A DNA stretch of 64,000 nt. It comes from Mytilus trossulus (Eukaryota). This document shows, piece by piece, positions 10,145 to 48,000 of the stretch. The stretch is from positions 34,991,216-35,055,215 of the forward strand of contig NC_086385.1 of assembly GCF_036588685.1 (NCBI RefSeq), read 5' to 3'. The notes under the pieces were generated by a model, which worked only from the letters and a program-made list of their open reading frames with translations, was not told the DNA's origin and did not search any database. Position 1 is the stretch's first letter. The number at the start of each line of letters is the position of its first letter. Position numbers and translations under genes: made by a program.

Positions 10145-13100
10145 GTAAGCATTTATTTAGTGCATTTAATTAGTAATGACAATTTGTGGATATTTAAATA
10201 CGTCCGTTTTTCTAACGTCTTGATGGCGATAGTATCATACCCCCCATCTTTTAACTTTGCCGGCCGGCATCTCTAAGTACTGCACTTTGTTGACAATGAC
10301 AATCTGTGTAATACATGTAGAATAACATAACAATGTGTCGAAATATGAAAATTATATGTACAAGTGTAAAACTGCAGCTTTGTCGTGCATTTCTATCCTG
10401 TGTCGAGCTTGGAAGTGCAAATGAAATGAGACAAACTTAAGAAATAGTTTAAAATTTGTATATATACTTTTTATTTTATATACTCCGCTACTGTCCAAAC
10501 TATAAAATGAAGTATTTGGTTTAAAATCAACCATTTTGAATATCAAGAGGACAAGTCAAAATTCCCGGGCCTTATTAATTCCTTGTTGCATTGGAATCGC
10601 ATTGTCAACATCATAAACAAGTCGGCTAACGGTCAGTGACAGTGAGTGTAAAAACTATACCTACGGTCAATGCAAATTGACTGTACAGTTGCATTTTGAA
10701 TACATTTGAATGCATGTCAAATTATACTTTGTTAATGACATTATAAGATTATTTCCCCCCCCCTCTTTTTTTTTTTTTACAAAAACAACAACAAGCAAAA
10801 GAATAACAAACGAAAAAAAAAACCGAAAAAAAAAATAAAATCTAAATTTAACGTGTAAACGTAAACAATGTTTAAAAGACCGCATGTATCGATAAATAGA
10901 AAAATTAAGTTATAAAGCTTTTTCCCTTTACCCCCCCCCCCCCCCCCCCTTTTTTGCATACATTCTAAAGATAGACATGCGTTGATAGAATGCTTTTAAA
11001 TACGGCATGAGTCACCGTGTTTTTCTCAGCAAATTATGAACACTGTCTTCCGTGTGTAGACTTGCTTTGGGCGGAAACATATAACTGACTGGACGTTATT
11101 GATGTGCATATGCATGATCCATTACATATTAATACTTCCTATGAATTACTTCGAATGCATATACTACGTGACGACCATGAAATATTTGCCCCTGGACGCT
11201 TAGTTGCCAACAATAATTTCGAATCTACGTGACTTAAATCGAAATTATCTTTGAAGTGAAGTGTTTGCCCCCCCCCCCCCCCCAACAAATACGAAGTTGA
11301 ACCTGTATTGCCTTTTTTTTTAAATTATTTAAAGCAATACTTTCACACCCAAACACATGAAAAAGGTATAACCTATATTAGTATTCTGGGATGTAACTAC
11401 AATTCCACAATAAATTTATACCTTTAACGTCACTTTTCTACCTACCAATGAATTCTGCAGGATGTACGAAAGGGGGGTTGTTAATTGTGCGTTATACATA
11501 AAAGTTGTACTGCTTCTGGAATAAATAGCTACCTCCAAAAAATCTTTTCGTCTCTATTCAAAAGGATATTTTGTTCCGTTTATTGGATATTTTCATTGGC
11601 GGATCCCGGGGGGGGGAAGGTTTCCGGGGGTTGGAAACCCCCTTTTTTGGACGATCAATGCATTTGAATGAGAGCATATAGTTGAACCCCCCTTTTTACT
11701 CTGGGTTGGGACCCCCCCTTTTAAAATGTCTGGATCCGCCCCTGACTTTATTGTACATCATGTACATAAAGTAAAACTTATTTTTGCCAGCAATGTATTC
11801 TAACATAATATTCTGAGCACATATTTGGATATTTGCTAATAAACATAATTTATTCAGTTGCTTTTGATTGGCTAGTGCCTTTGCTGAAATACCTAAAATA
11901 ACAACCCACGCCTTATAAATATATATTAAACCACTGCATGCTCTTGTGTTTTTTTTTGCACTGAATAGACATGATCGAATAACGAGACTCTCGCACGCCT
12001 AAATTGTAAAAGACCTTTTTCCGAATGTTTGCCCCCTCCCCCTCTCCCCATGAACTCTAACAAACACAATCCTTCCTCCATTACCACATATAATTTTGTT
12101 TTTGATACAAAACATAAATTAGACGTCAAAAGAAGTAAATGCACACAATTCAAAAAATCGTCAAAAAGGCAAAGAATTACCCGCTTTTTGTAATTTCAAA
12201 AAAAATTATAGATATATTGAAATAATTTATTTATGGTTATATGAGCTACTATACGATATATAGCACCTGCGACTTAACTTGAACATAGTGTTCATTGTCA
12301 AATTTATGGGCAGTTGGTCAAGTGAAAACAATTGCATACTACAATGTATACCTTTATCCTCATTTATATTTTTATGAAACAGAAAAGTTCCCCATTTAAA
12401 TGGTTAAAACCATAGTTTATAAAAAAAATATACACTTACTGCTGGTATTTATTACATTTCTTTTAATTATCTACTAATAATTACAGTTTAACAAAACAAT
12501 TTTCTCGACCCCCCCCCCCCCTTTTCCAAACCACTTCCAGAGAAAAAGAGTCATATTGAATATGTATACATGACGATCGTTTCATAATAAATTCCTATAA
12601 AAAATCAGCTCAAAGATTTTTTTATATTTCAGAGCCATATACTACAGAAGCAGGAGGAATTAGCCCATAAAGCAGTAGAATATACCACTACCTGTGGTAG
12701 CTATACCGCCTGGGACACTGATGTCGACCTTTCACCACCAGACCCGTCTGTCTCACTGAACAAAGATGACGTCAACATTCAAGATTACTACAATGCTTTA
12801 CAGTACAGCTTGTTTGAAAACAACCTTCCCGAGACTTTCGACAGAACGAAACAGCCGAGGACACGAAAGCATGATACGGAAGTCGCAATAGTTGTTTTAG
12901 CATCACCAGTGGAATGCCTGGCGATACTGCTAGAAGGTGGGCGCCAATGTCCGGGCGATATGCTACTCGTGTTGTCCCCAACATGGGTTGTGAAGGAGAA
13001 ATCTAATAAAGGTGAAGGTCTGCATTCCCTGTTGGTCAAGAAAGCAATCGTATTTGATCGGTCCGGAACAACCTATGTCGATGTCTTTCCGACCCCTAGA

Positions 13101-16100
13101 CGGTGTTCCTATTTTGTAAATTTCTTCACAAAGGCGATCACCGATGGCCAAAGAAATGATGGTGTGGAACTTGAGCAGGACTTGGACTGTCCAATGTCAA
13201 GTTCTGTTGAGCTGTGCAAGTATGTAGACGATAAACTACTGTCACGTATATGGATGGCGGAAGCGGGAGTAAATTACCCAGAAACCCTAGCTATTGCATA
13301 CAAACCATCGTATGAATACAATATTCCAGAAGACGCAAACATGAAAGTTTTGATCGTCGAAAATAAAGATGGCATAGATAATTATGTAGAAGAAAACATA
13401 CGTCAGTTCCTGAATATGGAGAGAGTCAGATCATTTGAAAAGGTATGTTAAAATTGTTTTTTCTGAAAGGTTACGTTGTAGTATATTACATAATTTTTTT
13501 TAAAGTAAGAACAAAATTTAAAACTCAAGGGCAATACATGTACAATATTTTTTTCAAGGAAGGATTAGAATTTGACGAAAAGGCAGATTGGAAAAACACA
13601 AAATTGATAGTAACAAGTTAAAACAAAAAAATTACCACACAAACCCAACCAAAAATGGTACGTTCTTTTGATGAAAAATTTTGCCTCTTTTAAAGGTTTT
13701 TTCTGTTATAAAAAAACGGGACTGATAAACGTTTAAAAAGAAGGAATAAATACTTGCATATCACCATCTTTTTATACAACACGTACCACAAGTCCAAAAA
13801 CGTATTTGTATCTATTGTATTTATTTTGTATTTTTATCTATAAATAGATAGTGGTAAAACCCTCTGGTACCATGTGGCACGGTAGTAGATGTGTGACGTT
13901 CCATAAAGTGAAAAATGTGGAAGAAATTTGTAAAGCTGTACTTGACTTGCTGGCTTTATTGGAATTGGAGAACACAGTCCTGGTTGAAACGTTTTATGAA
14001 CCTGTAGAAGCTGCAAATCCAGAATTAGGTGATATTATAATCGTGTTTAACAATGTAACTCTTGCAGTGGCGGGTCCAGTGGAGGGTTGCAGGTTTGACC
14101 CCATCTTTTTTTTAACGATCAAAGCATTTGAATGGGGACACATCGTTGGAAGCCCCTTTCTCCTGTCCAGGTTAGGAACCCCCTTTAGAAATATCTGGAT
14201 CCGCCCCTGCTCTTGAATATATGTATTATACCGTTTGAATTGATTTACATTTGGGCCCTATTAAGATGACTATGCGGTATGGGTTTTACTCCTTGATAAA
14301 GGTGACCGATAGTTGTTAGTTTCTAGGTCATTTGGTCTTTTAAAGACAGTTGTCTATTTGGCAATCATACCACATCTTATTTTTTATGCCCCACCTATGA
14401 TAGTAGAGGGGCATTATGTTTTCTGGTCATGTTCGCTATGATATGATCTTTCTAATTTTAATGCCAAATTAGAGTTTTTACCCCAATGTCACGGTCCACT
14501 GAACATAGAAATTGATAGTGCAAGTGGGGCATTCATGTACTGGGGACACATTCTTGTTATAATATAACTTGTTTATCTTGAATTGATTACATCAGAGAAG
14601 ACAGCAAATGATGTTTAAAGGCAGTCTTGTATGATGGGGTGAGGTACATGTATAGGGGACATGTTTTTCTTTTAAATAAAAAACAAGATATTTTTAGTTA
14701 CCTTTTCTAAAAAAATTAAATGAAGCAATCATCGATAATTAACCCCGGACATCCAATTATATATTAATTGTGGAAACAATTATTTATTTTTCAGCTGATT
14801 ACTCGTTCAGATGGAGGACCAATGTATGTAGAAGAGTAGACGATACACCAATCACAACACAAATGGTTTGTGGGATAGGTCTGAAACATCAACCAATCAA
14901 TGGTGACAACACTATTCCCCAAACTTTTGAAACAACAATGAAAATGTGGAATATGGAAGAAGATGAAATGAATCGTTTATTAGATAAAGTTTCCACAGGT
15001 TCAGAAAAGGTCATGGAGCGTATTATTGAATATGAGCGTGGTCTGTCTACAGATATCAAAGGAGGCGTTGGAGCACGAACTGAACTTATAGGTATGTCTT
15101 TTTTCTTTCTGTGTTTTTTAACCGGATGAAATTATTTGGGGTGTACGACGGGCGGCGTGCGGGCGTACGGCTGTCAAAAAGTGTCTGTTCATTTAAAACA
15201 TGAAAACGCGTTGAAGAAATCTTTTCAAATTTAAATAAATTTGTAGTTTCATGTGACTAAATGAAGGTCAAGTTCAATTTTCACCATTTTAGTTGTTTTC
15301 GTTGTTGAGTTTGGATCTTTTCAGAAGCAAAGGGATAGAATATGATTTATTCCGTTTGAGTTATTTCCCTTTGAACAAAAAAATAATAAGTTCATGGATA
15401 AAATTAAACTGTGCTTCATTTCACAATATATTGAATATTATATTCAGGGTTTATTCAAATGCTGAATCTTTTCTATCTGATCTGACCTAAAAGGGCATGT
15501 GAGCTGTTTACAAATGTAGCATTTCTTGGTTTGCATCGTTTTAAAATATTTCAGCCAATGAGAACAAAACTTGAAAAAATATCATTAGTGCATCAAGTTC
15601 CAAAAATGTTTCCAAGCATCCTGTCTACCAACTAACATGGTAGACATGTCTAATAATAGAGACGACAATAAACTAATCATACTTGCATTAAAAATTAATA
15701 ATTGATTTTTCTTAATTATTCCTTATAGGTATTGACTACGTTCTGGGAATGGTAGATGGACAGTTAGAAGCAGTTGGAATAGAAGTGAACAGTCATGACT
15801 GTACCATTAATTGTCAGTTGTTTGAGTTCTTAAATCCCCATAGACAGGGAGAAGCAGTGAAACCACTAGTTGAGACCATGATAAGACGTTCACAGCTGTT
15901 TGCCATGCAAGACAAAACTGTCGTTGTAGTCGGAGCTGGAGGTTTCAGCAAGAAGTTTATATGGGAAAGCTATAAATCATTTGGTATTAATGTAAGTCGA
16001 TTTATGACGTCATGAAACATTTCTATTTGTTTGAGATATATGAGATATAATTCTTTGTCTCAAAAGATATTCTTACAACCACTTAAATATGTACTGTCTA

Positions 16101-18852: not shown

Positions 18853-20216
18853 TGATCATTCCTAGCTATATTTGTATGTGTAAAGAACGATATGGTATGA
18901 TCGCCAATAAGACTACTACATCGGAGACAAATGACATAGAATTTAAGAACAATAGGTCACTGTACGGCCTTCAACAATGAGCAAAACACTAAACCGGCCT
19001 TCAACAATGAGCAAAACACTAAACCGCATTGTAGGATAAAAAAAGCCCCAAAATAACAAATGAAAAACTATGCAAACGAGAAAACTAACGAACTGCTTTA
19101 GGTAAAAAAAACAATGAACAAAAAACATGATATACAGAAGCAAACGACAACCACTAAATTACAGGAGGGACAAACATAAACATTCTCCAACTGTAAGAAA
19201 AGAGGTCGAGGATATTCGAGAACATATCACAACCAACTTAAATATACTACACTTAACTTGAAATACTTACATGTACATTTAAACAGAGGTTGAAATTCAT
19301 TATCAGTCTTTTACAAATGTTGACATGGACCAGGAAAAAAACTAGAGTTGTATATACTTTACACAACTGTTGAAAGTTAATAAACTCGCCATAGATGCCA
19401 GTATTGATACATAGACCATAGACATAGATACGACACCAGGACTTACAAACTCTTGAAAGATTTCAGTAACTGCTTGAAAACGGATAAGAGAGAAAAATGA
19501 ACCACTTGAAAGCTGACAAACCGTTCCTCGTAGAATAGTATCTACAGCACTATTATAAAATCAAAATGAAACGAATGAAACCATAACACTGTTCCTGTCG
19601 TGGACATGCATGTAGATACAGAAAAAGTTGGTTCAATTGTATCCATGTACGAATGATTGGTCGTCAAGGTCAACCTTTTCATTTTATATAATTTTTTGTC
19701 GGCAGGTTACCAATACTGTGATATATGGCATTCTGATATAATTTGCCAAGGAAAAGCAACTGAAAAAAGGTTGTAGTCCGAGAACATAAAACTTAATTTG
19801 AGCCGATTGTAATTTTTTTACTTGCTATTTCTTGGCCGAATACCAGAATGTCCTCCCACAGAGTAGGTTACATGTCGAAAATTTATATACAACGGAGTCG
19901 GTTTACTATATAGAAGGGGATTTAATGCTTCTATGGGCGAAATTAAGAATTAAGGGGACTGAAATTAAACATTTTTAGATCAAAATGATGGTCCAAGATT
20001 GTCCTGACGTCCGAAACGATCGAGTCTGACAGTAGTCAACAACATGTCGATAGAGAATTTTTTGTGCTGACATGAAAAAAGAAGATAAAAAATATGAAGC
20101 AAACAAAAACACAAGCAAAAAAAAGATGGGACACAAATAAATTTAAATAATTACAAAAAAAGGGTCGCAAAAAATTATACATTTTGTACCTCTAAAACAT
20201 GGCTCGCACTCGAAAC

Positions 20217-20251
20217 CTGAGACTACTATAACACATATATAGTAGTCTCAG
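20217..20251. mobile_element. 35-bp palindromic micro-element (same family) with 7-bp TSD
   Basis: CTGAGACTACTATA-ACACATA-TATAGTAGTCTCAG between direct repeats TCGAAAC (20210-20216, 20252-20258). Confidence 0.85.
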
Positions 20252-21344
20252 TCGAAACGCTTTTGAAAAGTCGACTTTAAATCATATTGTTGGTTGATTA
20301 ACGTCCAATGACAAATATGTCGGGCATGTAAAGCACGATACTACGAATCGAGAAATCACCACCATTAAAGCTTCTTCCATGCATGTAAAGAAATCAAGAT
20401 GACAGTTTGGTTTTAATGGAAACATGTGCATTTCATCTGCTACAGATGGGGTTCTGCGCCATTTAAATTTGACAGAACTCTTAAAATTTCTGGTTTGCAT
20501 ATTATGTCGGTAGTTTAAACTGACTATTGGCATTGCTTTTTGCAATTTTATGGAACAATTACAATCTGTGATTATGACAGAACAGTTGTTAACTCAGAGA
20601 AAGGAAACTATGCGAACTGTATTTGGGTAAGACTTCACTGTGAATATCGGGGGGTTCGTCCGGGGTTCGGACGAACCCCCCTTGAAAACAAATAAGCACT
20701 GTTAAAGTCAACGTTCTGTTCGAATTGTGACTGTTAAAGTCGAGTTCGCGAGTCCAAATAACCCCCTTGGAAATTCCTGGCTACGGGCCTGCTACACACA
20801 CATACACTTTAAAATACTAACTCAGCTTAGCAGGAATACATTAAGCGAAAATAGCAGGATAGCAAAACATAATAGCCAGTACATCATTAGCAGTATGATA
20901 TGAATTGGGAAATGTATTAGAGTTATATACATGATATATTAATTGATAAATAAAATACGGGTTCAGAAAGAGTTTAACCCATTTTGACACTTGTATTAAA
21001 GTATCTATTTTTTTCAGATGTATGCTTCTCATATATCTGAAAGGCGTCTGTCCAAAAGATATGAGACGGCTTTATCTTATTTACATAGATCGAAGAACTA
21101 ATTAGTTATTTGATCTTTTCCCTTGTCCTAAAAAGAAAAATTAGTTTAATTTGATAAAGCAGGAAAAGTGTCATTATTTCCCAGTTTTTTCCAGATGCAG
21201 TAAAAATTTCATAGATGTTTTGTATTCTTGAATGATATCTTGATTGCGTCTATTTTCTGTCATTATAATGCATATAAAATACCACATTGAGTTTATTTAA
21301 TTTACTGCTTTTGTATGGCAATATGAAAGGATTGTGAAGGATGA

Positions 21345-26035: not shown

Positions 26036-27982
26036 TCTTTTAATCTTACTCAATGAATGGCTATTATCTATTTTGAATTTAATAAAGTCAAAATAAATTA
26101 TTGCCATTCATTATAAATAAATTTCTATCAAAAATAAGGCTCAAAGAACTTTTTATATTACTTATATTAACAATAACAACGTACACACATGATGGCGTAT
26201 GAATACACAACGTCAGAATGGGCGTGTCGCCATCAAAATTGACAACATTGAAAATAAAACTAATAATTTTAACCAATCAGACAGTAAAAACACCAAATTT
26301 ATTTATTAACTGATAAGGTCTTTTCTCAGCACAGTGGAGTGATATAAAACATTATCGCCAGAAACTAAGGGCACACGTGCTTGTTGTCAATGAAATAAAA
26401 AAAAGTCGTCATAGGTAAAATAGCGATAAACAGATTATCATTGGTCATTTTGCCGCAACGGCTCAAGCGAGAAAATCAATCTCGTTCGGTTGAAATGATC
26501 AACGATAATATTTAACTCACATAGCTTTTTTCAAGAACAAAATTAATTACAAATTTTGTATCAATACCATACAGGAACACGAGTGTCTAATGTATTGTCC
26601 GCCATATTTTCAATGGAAACTAAAAATGTTTAGCATGAATGCCAACATCCATACCCACTCAAACACACCAACCAACCAAACACACACGATTAATAATCGT
26701 TGTTTTAAAGTTCGACTGTCTTGAAAGATGTTGCCAATGTTGACTATGACAAATCGGGAAGTCTCGGCTAATATACTAACTATCAGGCAGAAATTTATCA
26801 CGTCGGGTGCCTTTGTAGTTTCACTATGCTGTATGAATTTTTCTCATTGTTGAAGGCCATACCGTGACCTATAGTAGCTTGAATTTACGTAATTTAGTCT
26901 CCGATGGAAAGTTGTCTCATTAGCCTCTAAGACTTACTAGTACCACATTTTCTGATAAAACGTTTTTAATATTTATTTTCTTTTTCAATTAAAATTGTTT
27001 TACTAACACGAGATTGTCCTTTAGTCAATTAAAATTACATGGTAAAATTTTATTTCCAAAACTTTTATTTCAGAACGAAATAGTTAGGAAGAAGACGAAC
27101 TTTCTAAGAAAGCAGAAGAGTACACGACGACAGTTGGTAGTTATATTGCCTGGAACACAAACGTAGATCTAGCTTAGACCTCCCGACTCAACTGTCTCAC
27201 TAACCAAAGATGACGAACATATCCAGGATTACTGCAATGCTTTACAGTATAGCTTGTTTGAAAACAATATTCCCGAGACGATCGACATAACACACATACC
27301 AAGAACACCCAACCCTGAGACGGAAGTCGCAATCGTTGTTTTGGCATCACCAGTGGTACTAGCGATACTGCTAGAAGGTGGGCGCCAATGTCCGGGCGAA
27401 ATGTTACTCGTGCTGTCACCCACATGGCTCAAAAAGGATAAATCGAATAAAGGTGAAGGTCAATATTCACTTTTTGTCAAAAAAGCAATTGCTTTTGATC
27501 GTAGAGGGACTTCCTTTATCGATGTGTTCGAGAAACCTAGACGTTGTACCTACTTTGTGAACTTCTTTACACGTGCATGTACTGATGGCCAACGAAAAGA
27601 TGGTGTGGATATTGAGTTGGTTTTGGATTGCCCGATGTCCAGTTCTTTTGAACTGTGCAAATACGTGGATGATAAACTTTTAACTCGCATATGGATGGCG
27701 GAAGCGGTTGTACATTACCCAGAAACACTAGCGGTTGTTTATAAACCGGCGTATGAATACAATGTTCCTAATGATGCGAATATTGAAGTTATAGCTATTG
27801 AAAATAAACAAGACGCAAAAAAACCATTGAGGATAAAGTTAAACATTTTCTGAGTTTAGAAAATATTCATTCAAAAGGAAAGGTAAACTATCTTGACTTT
27901 AGGCATTTAAAAACACTAATTTTTTGCTTGTATTTTTTGTTAAAAAAACACTCAACTTCATTGGAATCGTTTTCTGTCTCTT

Positions 27983-43400: not shown

Positions 43401-44986
43401 AAATGTCTTTTCAGGAAATTTAGAATCACAATATTTTTTAAACAAAGCATACCTCTCCCCAACACAATAAATGCTACTTTAAAGTTCGACTGTTTTTAAA
43501 AGATAAACAAGTTAGGAGTGTAAATTTCACATTGGTATCTATCGCCTCTATAAGATAAATATTTTAACTATTTGAGAGATGCTAATCGTACAAATACAGC
43601 ACACTTTTTATTGTTCAAAATACCAGATACTACAGTTCTGAGGCCCCTCATGGGGATATCCAAGTAATCACACAATTACAAGTTTTTAAACAAAATAATC
43701 AGATAATCATTTGTAACATTTTTAAACAATATAATAAAATAATCAAAAATACGATCGTGAAATATCAAATAATCAAGTAATTATGAAATAAAAAGTCTAC
43801 TCTTGTAATCAAATAATCACATAATCAAGGACTGACTGACGGACTGACGGAAGGACAGACAGAGGTAAAACAGTATACCCTCCCTTTTTTAAAGCGGGGG
43901 TATAAAAAAACCATGAGGAGAATCATTATTTGATGCAAATGCACACATTCCTATTTACATGATTTACTTCCAGAATTATAATTGTGATCAATAATGATAA
44001 TGATATAATATTGATAACGATGATATTACATATAAATATGATAATGAAATGTTATATCCATTTTAACAGAAAATTGTGTGAAAAAATTAAATTTAAATGT
44101 CACGTACTTTCTAAAATGTAATATTATACATTTTTCATGGCAAACACTTATATTTATAGAAAGTGCATGTCAATGATATTTGATCCATTGTAAATATAAA
44201 AAATGCCAGTAAGCCAAGTATACCTACTTGAATAAACATTAAGTATACTCTCAAAAATCTTCACATTTTTTGTTAAGTTAAGTAAACAAAAAAAGTGCAT
44301 TGACTTTTCTTAGATAAACATTTTTAAGATAATGTGCGTTCGGAAATGGGAATCTGTTCTACTTTTTTTGACGTTTCATTTATCTTTTCGTTTCCGTTTG
44401 AAGGTCGGCTCGTAGGCAATCATGAAATATCATCTTTTTTTTTTAAATGGAAGCTTTTTACGAAATAATTATATATCTATATAAGTTCTATTAATTCTCT
44501 ATGTATTTTTAACACAAGGAAATTCAGTCTGGCATCTTCATTTATTGTTATTCAAAGACACTTACTTTTGCATTTAGGACGAGATTACTAGGAAGCAGGA
44601 GGAACTAGCTAAGAAGGCAGAGGAATATACGACGACAGTAGGTAGTTATACTGCCTGGAACACAAACGTAGATCTAGGACCTCCCGACTCAACTGTCTCA
44701 CTGACCAAAGATGATGTACATATCCAGGATTACTACAATGCTTTACAATATAGTTTGTTTGAGAACAATCTTCCCGAGACTATCGACAGAACGCAGAAAC
44801 CGAGAACATGCCACCCGGATACGGAAGTTGCAATCGTTGTTTTGGCATCACCAGTGGAATGTCTAGCGATATTGCTAGAAGGTGGACGACAATGTCCGGG
44901 CGAAATGTTACTGGTGATGTCACCTACCTGGCTCATTAAGGATAAATCTAATAAAGGTGAAGGTCAACACTCGCTTTTTGTTAAAA

Positions 44987-45022
44987 CTGAGACTACTATA
45001 ACATGTGTTATAGTAGTCTCAG
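44987..45022. mobile_element. 36-bp palindromic micro-element with 7-bp TSD, in exon 2 of copy 3
   Basis: CTGAGACTACTATAACA-TG-TGTTATAGTAGTCTCAG (perfect 17-bp arms) between direct repeats GTTAAAA (44980-44986, 45023-45029). Absent at the homologous site in copies 1 and 2. Confidence 0.85.
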
Positions 45023-48000
45023 GTTAAAAAGGCAATTGTTTTTGATCGTACCGGAACTTCCTTTATCGATGTGTTTTAGAAACCTAGACGGTGTACCTAC
45101 TTTGTGAACTTCTTCTCACGTGCATGTACTGATGGACAAAGAAACGATGGTGTTGATGTTGAGTTGGATTTGGACTGCCCGATGTCCAGTTCTGTTGAGC
45201 TGTATAAATACGTGGACGATAAACTATTGACTCGTATATGGATGGCGGAAGCGGGTGTGCATTACCCAGAAACACTAGCAGTTGTGTACAAACCGGCGTA
45301 TGAGTACAATGTCCCAAAATGATGCACATATTGAAGTTATAGTTGTTGAAAGAAAAAAGGACGTAAACAATTACATTGAAGACAAAGTTAAGCATTTCCT
45401 GAAGTTAGAAAATATTGAGTCAATAGGAAAGGTAAACTACTTTGATTTGAGGCAATGTTTTTTTTCTTGTATCTTCTGGTGTATTTTTTCTCCTTCATCA
45501 GAATAATGTTTTATCTCATTTATTAAGCAATTACTCATATACTGAACACAGACAACCGATGTACTTAAAACTTCGTGATGATTCAGATCTTCAAGGGTCA
45601 CGTGATGCTCATAGTCTTATCATTCATTTTCAGATAAATGTTTTGAAATATTTCTTTTTTTTCAAGTTTAAATACAGAAACTGTCTGAATATTTAGAAAT
45701 TTAAAGATATCAGTCTTGTCTTGAATTACCACAAATTGCAACATTTTCTACGATAAAGACCACAGAAGAAAATTAACTAGCAAGATCCGACGCTGTGTGA
45801 GGTTTTACTGTTTTGTTTAATTAGTGAATGCAAATGGAAAAAAAAAATGTATTCGTGAATGATAGGTTTTTCTTTAGATATCATAATGCATTTTCCATAA
45901 CCTTGATCTTTCTGGATTTTCCAATGATCCTCAAAGTCCAATATTTGTTGCAAAAGTTCTTTTACCAAAGGGAGCGTAGCGCTCTCTTTACTAGTAATCA
46001 CTCCCATTTTTGATAGAACGTATAATAAAAAGAAAAATCCCGAATTGAAAGAAAAAAATCATCATATGAGTGTTGTTAGCTGGTAATTTATATATTTTTA
46101 GAGAATTTCTAATGACTGAAAATTCTTAATTCAGATTTAAATGAACATATCAATTAAGCAATGCTTTCCAAAATTCACAGTATTCACCGAACTTAGCATG
46201 CATGACACATTTGCCACTGGACATAAAACAAACAACAATCAGTTAATAAAGTATTTATACAAGATTATCATAATTTATTTTACTAGATCGTGGTTAAACC
46301 CTCTGGTATTATGTGGCATGGCAGTAGATGCGTGTCGTTCCACGAAGTGGCAAATGTGGAAGACATTTGTAAAGCTGTGACGGACTTTTTATCCATATTG
46401 GAAGTAGAAAATGCTGTAATGATTGAGGGATTTTATCACCCTGTAGAATCAACAAACCCAAAACTAGGTAATAAATACAATGTCATATCTAAAAACATGA
46501 TTCACTCAGAAAAGGGTCTGTCCTCAAAACGTGCCAAGTCAACGCCACTGTGTGTCGAAACATGTTTCAATGGTTTTTTTGCGCTTTACGTGACATGTCC
46601 TTACACTAGCGCCCGATCGTGTACATTTTTGAAAACGTCGAAATGTGTCCACATTTATGAAACCAAGTCAATGGTTTAAAAACATGTCCAAATAACAACT
46701 TCCTTTCTACAGGAGTCACAGCAGAACATAGCCTTTATTCTGACTGATAATAGGATATATTTGCAATAGACAAGTGTATCACCTTCAGTAGAAATGTAAG
46801 AGTCCACGTGCAGATATGTTTCAAGAAATCGTTCTACTGAATGCACGTACGCGTGCGAGGTATGATTTCATAATTTAATAATTCTGTATAGCAGAGGCAC
46901 AGTAGTGTTTTGTTGCAGTATATAATAGCAAGCTTGATCAGATGAAATTCAACAATTTCTATTGTTTGCTTACATTTTTTACGTGTTTTGGCAAGGTTAT
47001 AATTCGGACACGTTTGAGCGATGTTATTATAACAGGAAACTCAGTTAATGGGCATCAACATTGACAATTTCGGGCTGTTTGTATCTGTCACCAGCCTTAT
47101 TCCAGTTTACCAGATTATTTTGATTACGAGTGTACTGTATACTAAACACGAAACACACATGAAACTTTTTATTTCATATTAGACTTGAAATGTCTGCCTA
47201 TCATTACATAAGTTGAACTTGACTTTACATTCAGTGTTAAGCAAGTATCATTCAATCTTTTCAGCTGATTATTCGTTCAGATTGAGGACCAATGTATGCA
47301 GAAGAATAGACGATACACCAACTGCAACCCAGATGGTTTGTGGGATAGGTCTGAAAAAATCAACCAATCAATGGCGACAACCCTATTCCACATTCATTCG
47401 AAACAACAATGCAAATGTGGAACATGGATAAAGCAGAAATAAAACGACTATTACATACTGTATCCCAAGGTTCGGAAAAGATCATGGATAGTATTATTGC
47501 ATTTGAACGAACGCTTTCAACAGATTTAAGAGGAGGTGTCGGAGCTCAAACGGATCTTATCGGTATGTCGTCTTTTGTTTTGTATTTTTAATGTTCCTTT
47601 GTTGTTTTCTAAAGGATTCGTCATATTACAGAGTACTCATTTAATTCACCACCTTGAAAGGTTTAGATCTCCTTTTTTTTTCTTAAAGTAAAACATATCA
47701 TATTTTTTAGTCCTTTGCAATGTGAAAAAAACCACGTAAAACTGAGAAAATATAAAAAATATACTCTGTATAGTTAATTATATATAAAGTAGTTGATACA
47801 TTGTTATAAAAAGACCAAAACAGAAGCAATGTATAGAAAACTTAAGCCCAAGAATCACAACTTCACGAACAACCAATAATCTCAGTTTCTCCTGCGTCAC
47901 ATGTGACACCCGCCATGTTTCTCCTCATACCGTGATAAATATCAACAAAGAAACAAGAAAATATCTATGAAGTTATGACTTTATAATTTAGTTATTACTA

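What the first reader, a model, noticed from the sequence alone, without database searches (positions are those of the whole stretch)
44980..45029. A 36-bp hairpin behaves like a transposon and frameshifts an exon
Seen: a perfect 17-bp-arm palindrome (CTGAGACTACTATAACA-TG-TGTTATAGTAGTCTCAG) flanked by a 7-bp duplication (GTTAAAA). Copies 1 and 2 provide the empty site (LVKKAI / LFVKKAI), so this is a clean 43-bp insertion. A second family member at 20217 has a different 7-bp TSD. Inference: an element consisting of almost nothing but two TIRs, much shorter than typical MITEs. 7-bp TSDs are uncommon and the CTGAG terminus matches no superfamily I can confidently name, so the mobilising enzyme is unknown. 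It could also be the collapsed remnant of a larger element.
Basis: partly seen in the sequence, partly recalled or inferred. Interest (0 to 1): 0.82.

Follow-up and report, generated by a model that had tools for sequence, protein, structure and literature searches.

The report
P-type transposon excision scar in exon
The 36-bp hairpin is most likely the scar left when a 4-6 kb P-element-like transposon cut itself out of this gene copy, not a tiny transposon, and the genome holds hundreds of such scars.

Summary
Window 44987-45022 is a perfect 17+2+17 palindrome between two GTTAAAA copies. It is a clean 43-bp insertion relative to both paralogous exons. A second copy sits at 20217-20251 with TSD TCGAAAC.

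The interpretation changes. The arms are the outer 17-19 nt of the 35-bp terminal inverted repeat of a 3.6-6 kb non-autonomous transposon family with 7-bp TSDs; 13 full copies were checked.

Short remnants occur at 438 places genome-wide. Their centres differ by trimming, microhomology and filler, while substitutions are only about 1%. Arm length stops sharply at 19 nt, and the 19+19 form is the mode (76 copies). This is what end-joining after a long staggered P-type cut produces; Drosophila P transposase cuts 17 nt inside its repeat.

Some family copies carry the first exon of a zinc-finger gene. At 13 or more other loci its homologues lie beside a P-type transposase (Pfam TNP-like domains; PDB 6P5A, E=5e-14). 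I predicted that a transposase-bearing sister family would leave similar scars, and found 835.

Gene copy 3 also has a nonsense codon and a second frameshift, so it is a pseudogene. No read-level or polymorphism test was possible. Other first readers noted similar P-type footprints elsewhere in this genome.

The parts
44980..44986 (.). Left copy of the 7-bp target-site duplication, GTTAAAA
   Evidence: The paralogues have one copy only.
44987..45022 (.). 36-bp excision scar: 17 nt of one TIR end joined to 19 nt of the other
   Evidence: arms 17 and 19, no filler. The arms equal TIR positions 1-17 and 1-19 of the full elements L046-L058.
45023..45029 (.). Right copy of the 7-bp target-site duplication, GTTAAAA
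20210..20258 (.). Second scar of the same family: TCGAAAC, then 35 bp (19-nt arm + 2 nt + 14-nt arm), then TCGAAAC
44578..45319 (+). Large exon of gene copy 3. It is broken by the scar (+43 nt), by a TAG at 45077-45079, and by a further frame change near 45279-45319.
27173..27850 (+). Paralogous exon (copy 2): open frame of 226 aa that provides the empty site
   Evidence: No Pfam match.
12591..13448 (+). Paralogous exon (copy 1): open frame of 286 aa that provides the empty site
   Evidence: No Pfam match.

Best explanation
A several-kb non-autonomous P-superfamily DNA transposon (35-bp TIR beginning CTGAGACTACTATAACACAG, 7-bp TSD) once inserted into the exon of gene copy 3 and later excised. 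The transposase cut the transferred strand exactly at each element end and the other strand about 19 nt inside the TIR. Each donor flank therefore kept a roughly 19-nt 3' overhang of TIR sequence next to its TSD copy. End-joining of the two flanks, with 2 nt trimmed from one side here, left TSD + 17 nt + 19 nt + TSD. Shown here: the insertion, the TSD, the identity of the arms with the TIR of full elements, the genome-wide heterogeneity of junctions, and the sharp 19-nt limit on arm length. Inferred: that a P-type enzyme did it, and that the cut is about 19 nt inside the repeat.
For: 1. Full elements. 57 long TIRs define about 14 paired elements of 3.6-9 kb. 13 of 13 checked have perfect 7-bp TSDs and 35-bp TIRs whose first 19 nt are the scar arms.
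2. Short remnants. There are 438 places genome-wide against 0 for the control pattern. Only 76 are the canonical 19+19 38-mer. 115 lie within 2 mismatches of it, so substitution is about 1%, yet 83% differ at the centre.
3. Length distribution. In 48 remnants on contig C1, 35 are 30-38 bp with the mode at 38. A sparse tail of 40-86 bp carries fillers, some copied from the TIR.
4. Arm lengths. In 17 scripted remnants, 20 of 34 arms are 19 nt (20 only where one further junction base also fits), 13 are 14-18 nt, one is long, and none is 21-34 nt.
5. TSDs of remnants. 14 of 20 are perfect 7-bp duplications and 4 match at 6 of 7.
6. Unpaired ends. About 1,000 further 14-nt termini are solo or in longer pairs, as expected when joining also deletes sequence.
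7. Link to the enzyme. Copies L056, L057 and L060 carry exon 1 of a C2H2 zinc-finger gene. Its homologues lie convergent with a P-type transposase at 13 or more loci. That transposase has Pfam TNP-like RNaseH_N (7e-22), GTP-binding insertion domain (5e-19) and RNaseH_C, and matches the solved Drosophila P transposase 6P5A at E=4.7e-14.
8. Prediction test. The terminus of the transposase-bearing L061 family gives 835 short palindromic remnants against 0 for the control, again with variable centres and arms up to about 19-20 nt.
9. Literature. The 17-nt staggered cut is distinctive of the P transposase (PMC7776569, PMC10983969). 7-bp TSDs and palindromic target motifs occur in P-superfamily Galileo (PMC4168063). 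Here a palindromic target motif is seen, with T at -3 in 40 of 52 symmetrised sites.
Against: No copy of this exact family in hand encodes a transposase, so the link to the P-type enzyme is by association through the shared zinc-finger gene and the sister family. The TIRs of the two families are not alike beyond a short GATTGG motif. The TSD of the sister family was not seen. No site was found with a full element in one haplotype and a scar in another. A few remnants keep 21-22 nt or 50-64 nt on one side, which direct joining of 19-nt overhangs does not explain by itself.
Confidence: 0.8

Rival explanations
1. A micro-MITE: the 30-40-bp palindrome is itself mobilised by a transposase and inserts with a 7-bp TSD, so each copy is an insertion rather than a scar.
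For: It has complete outer termini, a TSD and hundreds of copies. The 38-mer is the commonest single form with 76 copies.
Against: 83% of copies differ from the 38-mer by central indels, while substitutions are about 1%. Amplification from a master copy would give uniform centres. Arms are truncated from the inside only, and fillers are copied from TIR positions beyond the arm. About half of all termini are unpaired or in longer pairs. In Drosophila P, the transposase binding sites lie inside the element beyond the TIR (PMC7776569), so such a stub would lack them. That point is inference for this family.
Confidence: 0.08
2. Collapse by interrupted gap repair: after excision the break was repaired by copying from a sister or homologous copy, synthesis stopped early on both sides, and the ends were joined. 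The arm length would then reflect repair, not the position of the cut.
For: A minority of remnants have one long arm of 31-64 nt or arms of 21-22 nt, with templated fillers. Internally deleted copies of 0.9-1.5 kb exist.
Against: Interrupted synthesis should give a broad spread of arm lengths. Observed arms pile up at exactly 19 nt and none of 34 falls at 21-34 nt. The sister family shows a similar limit.
Confidence: 0.1
3. Assembly or sequencing artefact at a hairpin-forming site.
For: None found. Raw reads could not be examined.
Against: The remnants occur at 438 places, each between its own 7-bp duplication and matching the ends of real multi-kb elements. The control pattern gives 0.
Confidence: 0.01

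Closest known systems
Drosophila P-element excision footprints (17-nt staggered donor cleavage followed by end-joining)
   Same: The scar keeps both TSD copies plus a fixed-maximum stretch of each TIR end. Junctions vary by trimming, microhomology and filler. The associated transposase shares the RNase H fold with the GTP-binding insertion domain. The cut geometry is described in PMC7776569 and PMC10983969. That Drosophila footprints keep about 14-18 nt per end (Beall and Rio 1997; Staveley et al. 1995) is from my own knowledge and was not read here.
   Different: The inferred stagger is about 19 nt rather than 17. The TSD is 7 bp rather than 8. The scars are natural, fixed in an assembly and number in the hundreds per family, rather than products of laboratory excision. 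No THAP domain was found in the related transposase.
Galileo / 1360 (P-superfamily transposons with 7-bp TSDs)
   Same: 7-bp TSD and a palindromic target-site motif (PMC4168063). Most copies are non-autonomous.
   Different: The TIR is 35 bp, not the long foldback-like repeat of Galileo. The host is not a drosophilid. A second, zinc-finger gene is present.
MITEs, including very short ones
   Same: A short, non-coding, TIR-bounded, TSD-flanked multicopy sequence.
   Different: The centres are heterogeneous by indel rather than by descent. The length of 30-38 bp is far below typical MITEs. The evidence points to scars rather than insertions.

Membership tests
P-superfamily DNA transposon (the parent element) | 7-8-bp target-site duplication | tested here: met
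   13 of 13 full elements have perfect 7-bp TSDs. Of 20 short remnants, 14 are perfect and 4 match at 6 of 7.
P-superfamily DNA transposon (the parent element) | Terminal inverted repeats | tested here: met
   35-bp TIR, found 57 times genome-wide with at most 1 mismatch.
P-superfamily DNA transposon (the parent element) | Encodes a transposase with a split RNase H fold and a GTP-binding insertion domain | tested here: inconclusive
   No transposase remnant in any copy of this family in hand. The domains are present next to the homologous zinc-finger gene in sister families.
P-superfamily DNA transposon (the parent element) | N-terminal THAP DNA-binding domain | tested here: not met
   No THAP hit in the 913-aa sister-family transposase, including its first 431 aa at E up to 5. 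An upstream exon outside the locus cannot be excluded.
P-superfamily DNA transposon (the parent element) | Long staggered cleavage inside the TIR (17 nt in Drosophila P) | tested here: inconclusive
   Only indirect evidence: arms pile up at 19 nt with a sharp upper limit, and the limit is about 19-20 nt in the sister family.
Excision footprint | Both TSD copies retained around only the terminal nucleotides of a known larger element | tested here: met
Excision footprint | Junction heterogeneity typical of end-joining (trimming, microhomology, filler) | tested here: met
Excision footprint | The same site occupied by the full element in another haplotype or individual | not testable with these tools
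The one flank tried for a haplotig test was itself a repeat.
MITE | Copies related by descent from an amplifying master, with uniform internal sequence | tested here: not met
   Only 17% share the modal centre, although substitution divergence is about 1%.

The most novel reading that the evidence does not exclude
The stubs may not be inert. The 19+19 palindrome could keep everything this THAP-less P-like transposase, or its zinc-finger partner, needs at the extreme termini. Some of the 76 identical 38-mers would then be re-mobilised, making them the smallest known eukaryotic cut-and-paste elements. Independently of that, the scars would form a countable fossil record of more than 1,200 excision events for two families.
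Probability: 0.1. Interest if true: 0.8.

Novelty: new member of a known kind. Interest (0 to 1): 0.45.

Why it matters
Most DNA-transposon footprints are only a few bases long and cannot be recognised in a genome. P-type scars are 30-40 bp plus a TSD, so past excisions can be counted from sequence alone. Here there are at least 438 for one family and 835 for another, against a few dozen surviving elements.

The scars let the cleavage offset of an uncharacterised P-like transposase be read from the genome, at about 19 nt. They also show that cut-and-paste turnover with end-joining repair has been frequent and recent in this animal. Each scar adds about 43-45 bp, which is enough to break exons, as in this gene copy.

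For annotation, such palindromes should be labelled as scars rather than as a new MITE family.

Tried and rejected
- The 4.26-kb reference element has no ORF of 100 aa or more. The hAT dimerisation ORF in L058 belongs to a nested hAT insert with its own 8-bp duplication, so it is not the parent enzyme.
- A genome search with Pfam PF12017 found nothing, and its controls found nothing either, so it is uninformative.
- tblastn with the sister-family transposase against all held copies of this family found nothing.
- An inverted-repeat search in L063 gave no convincing TIR; the left end probably lies outside the locus.
The termini and TSDs of the 13 transposase-bearing loci were therefore not read.
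I did not try this by another route.
- The haplotig test on the L048 flank failed because the flank is itself a multicopy repeat.
- The protein atlas search for the zinc-finger protein was uninformative.
- Pfam gave no match for the host gene exon.
- A literature search for the terminal sequences found nothing. Dfam and Repbase were not available.
- A generic scan of the window for other TSD-flanked short palindromes found only these two.

Full report
**Observation**

Window 44980-45029 reads GTTAAAA, then a 36-bp perfect palindrome (17-nt arms around TG), then GTTAAAA. Window 20210-20258 reads TCGAAAC, then a 35-bp relative, then TCGAAAC. The 14-nt terminus occurs four times in the window against 0.36 expected.

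The exon holding the first copy has two paralogues in the window, at 27200-27753 (88% identity) and 12756-13312 (81%). Aligned, both carry a single GTCAAAA or GTCAAGA and no insert, so copy 3 has a clean 43-bp insertion.

One qualification applies. In the original frame copy 3 also has a TAG at 45077-45079, where the paralogues read GAG and CCG. It has a further frame change near 45279-45319. Copy 3 is therefore a pseudogene with at least three lesions, and the order in which they arose is unknown. The exon has no Pfam match.

**Genome-wide picture**

The window lies in a 1.30-Gb eukaryotic assembly, at C13:34991216-35055215. The pattern 'terminus, 0-60 nt, inverted terminus' occurs at 438 places, against 0 for the control pattern. 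The centres are not uniform.

- In 48 remnants on contig C1, 35 are 30-38 bp long with the mode at 38.
- 13 form a sparse tail of 40-86 bp. Their fillers are in several cases copied from the repeat itself.
- The modal 38-mer is a 19+19 perfect palindrome. It occurs 76 times exactly and 115 times within two mismatches.

Substitution divergence is therefore only about 1%, yet 83% of remnants differ from the modal form at the centre. Decay of an amplified master copy cannot produce that pattern. Independent joining events can.

A script over the 17 remnants I could fetch with flanks, plus three longer ones, gave the following:

- Of 34 arms, 20 are 19 nt (20 only where one further junction base also fits), 13 are 14-18 nt, one is long, and none is 21-34 nt.
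- TSDs are perfect 7-mers in 14 of 20 and match at 6 of 7 in four more.

The bare 14-nt terminus occurs 2,008 times against about 57 for the control. About 1,000 ends are therefore solo or paired at 0.9-1.5 kb. This fits joining that sometimes deletes one arm, and it means 438 is a lower bound.

**The parent element**

A few longer remnants showed that the repeat continues beyond position 19. The 35-nt version occurs 57 times with at most one mismatch. It defines about 14 paired elements of 3.6-9 kb, which I fetched as L046-L059.

Thirteen of thirteen have perfect 7-bp TSDs and the same 35-bp TIR, whose first 19 nt are the scar arms. Copies are 92-99% alike.

The 4.26-kb form has no ORF of 100 aa or more and carries subterminal tandem repeats of about 200 bp. 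The 9-kb copy holds a nested hAT with its own 8-bp duplication, which is irrelevant here.

Three variant copies (L056, L057, L060) carry what looks like the first exon of a C2H2 zinc-finger protein. It lies 1.19 kb from one end and reads inward. None of the copies in hand carries any transposase remnant. The family as sampled is non-autonomous.

**Which enzyme**

Searching the genome with that zinc-finger exon found 52 matches. Two of them, fetched as L061 and L063, have a full 413-433-aa zinc-finger gene lying tail-to-tail with a large ORF. The 913-aa ORF has three Pfam domains:

- TNP-like RNase H N-terminal domain (7e-22)
- GTP-binding insertion domain (5e-19)
- RNase H C-terminal domain (8e-6)

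It also matches the solved Drosophila P-element transposase 6P5A at E=4.7e-14.

Comparing the coordinates shows the same convergent pair at 13 or more loci in several lineages. Identity to this family's zinc-finger exon there is 39-52%. The zinc-finger gene is therefore a regular second gene of a clade of P-like transposons, and the family in the window is a transposase-less derivative of that clade. This step is by association, not direct.

**A prediction that could have failed**

If P-type excision makes these scars, a sister family that still carries the transposase should have left the same kind of scar. I located one terminus of the L061 family by finding where its copies stop matching. 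I then searched for that terminus facing its own inverse within 30 nt.

The result was 835 places against 0 for the control. Again the centres vary, perfect 16+16, 17+17 and 19+19 palindromes recur, and arms reach about 19-20 nt.

**Mechanism**

The P transposase is distinctive among cut-and-paste enzymes for an unusually long 17-nt staggered cut at each end (PMC7776569, PMC10983969). The transferred strand is cut at the element tip and the other strand inside the repeat. Each donor flank therefore keeps a 3' overhang of repeat sequence next to its TSD copy.

Joining the two flanks gives TSD + arm + arm + TSD, with trimming and filler. Here the sharp limit points to a cut about 19 nt inside the repeat. 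That value is inferred, not measured.

Seven-bp TSDs and palindromic target motifs are known from P-superfamily Galileo (PMC4168063). In 26 sites of this family, symmetrised, T stands three bases before the TSD in 40 of 52 cases, with T at TSD position 2 and A at position 6. That is a 13-bp palindromic motif shared by scars and full elements.

**Rivals**

- *A self-mobile micro-MITE.* It fits the TSD and the copy number. It does not fit the indel-type heterogeneity at low substitution, the inside-only truncation, or the many unpaired ends. I give it 0.08.
- *Interrupted copying during gap repair.* It explains the minority with one long arm or 21-22-nt arms. It does not explain the pile-up at exactly 19 nt. 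I give it 0.10 as the main route.
- *An artefact.* It is very unlikely given hundreds of TSD-flanked copies that match real elements.

**What is missing**

- No transposase-bearing copy with these exact termini.
- No TSD for the sister family.
- No allele pair of full element versus scar.
- No Dfam or Repbase comparison.

A text search of the paper library for the terminal sequences found nothing.

**Comparison and novelty**

P-element footprints are textbook in Drosophila genetics, so the mechanism is known. Three things are new here:

- the family itself;
- the inferred 19-nt offset with a 7-bp TSD in a non-drosophilid animal;
- the abundance of natural, fixed scars.

Other first-stage readers flagged 17+17 palindromes with 7-bp TSDs elsewhere in this genome as P-type footprints. 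Those notes are unchecked. They agree with my reading, which I reached independently from the anatomy. The scan has therefore seen this phenomenon before on other DNA of this genome.

**Verdict**

I classify it as a new member of a known kind, with moderate interest.

Noticed in passing
L063:242-2980 (+) and L063:5058-6356 (-); L061:2-2226 (+) and L061:4011-5249 (-): A clade of P-like transposons with two convergent genes. One is a P-type transposase in which no THAP domain was detected. The other is a 411-433-aa protein with one C2H2 finger and an acidic N-terminus (MSDFLSWD...). The pair recurs at 13 or more loci. The finger protein might supply the DNA binding that THAP normally gives; this is speculation.
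   Followed up: partly
genome-wide; terminus read at L061:5781-5810 (- strand): A second family, whose terminus contains AAGGATTTGTATAGTTAGAAGGATTGG, has 835 short palindromic remnants. Sub-variants of the repeat (GTTAG, GTGAG, GTAAG) each left remnants. The exact first base and the TSD were not determined.
   Followed up: partly
window 45077-45079 and about 45279-45319: Gene copy 3 carries an in-frame TAG and a second frame change besides the scar, so it is a pseudogene of a three-copy tandem family whose large exon has no Pfam match.
   Followed up: partly
L058:151-4891: A 4.7-kb hAT element (ORF with the hAT dimerisation domain, 3.9e-08) is nested 50 bp inside the left end of a full P-like element, with an 8-bp duplication of host-element sequence.
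   Followed up: partly
L047:442-969 (element positions 342-869): Subterminal tandem repeats of about 200 bp (three units, 78-89% alike) near one end of the 4.26-kb element. They may be binding-site arrays.
   Followed up: no
L061:6054-6618: An unrelated repeat of about 565 bp with dozens of copies at 91-98% identity lies just outside the L061 element end.
   Followed up: no
L060:4445: A further CTGAG terminus sits inside a 5.8-kb family member, and that copy's right end lacks its last 3 nt. It could be a nested insertion or a scar within an element.
   Followed up: no
G000:C1:76439264-76439349 and C1:41712798-41712856: Complex remnants with two or three tandem copies of one arm plus a short spacer, which look like templated or slipped repair products.
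   Followed up: no
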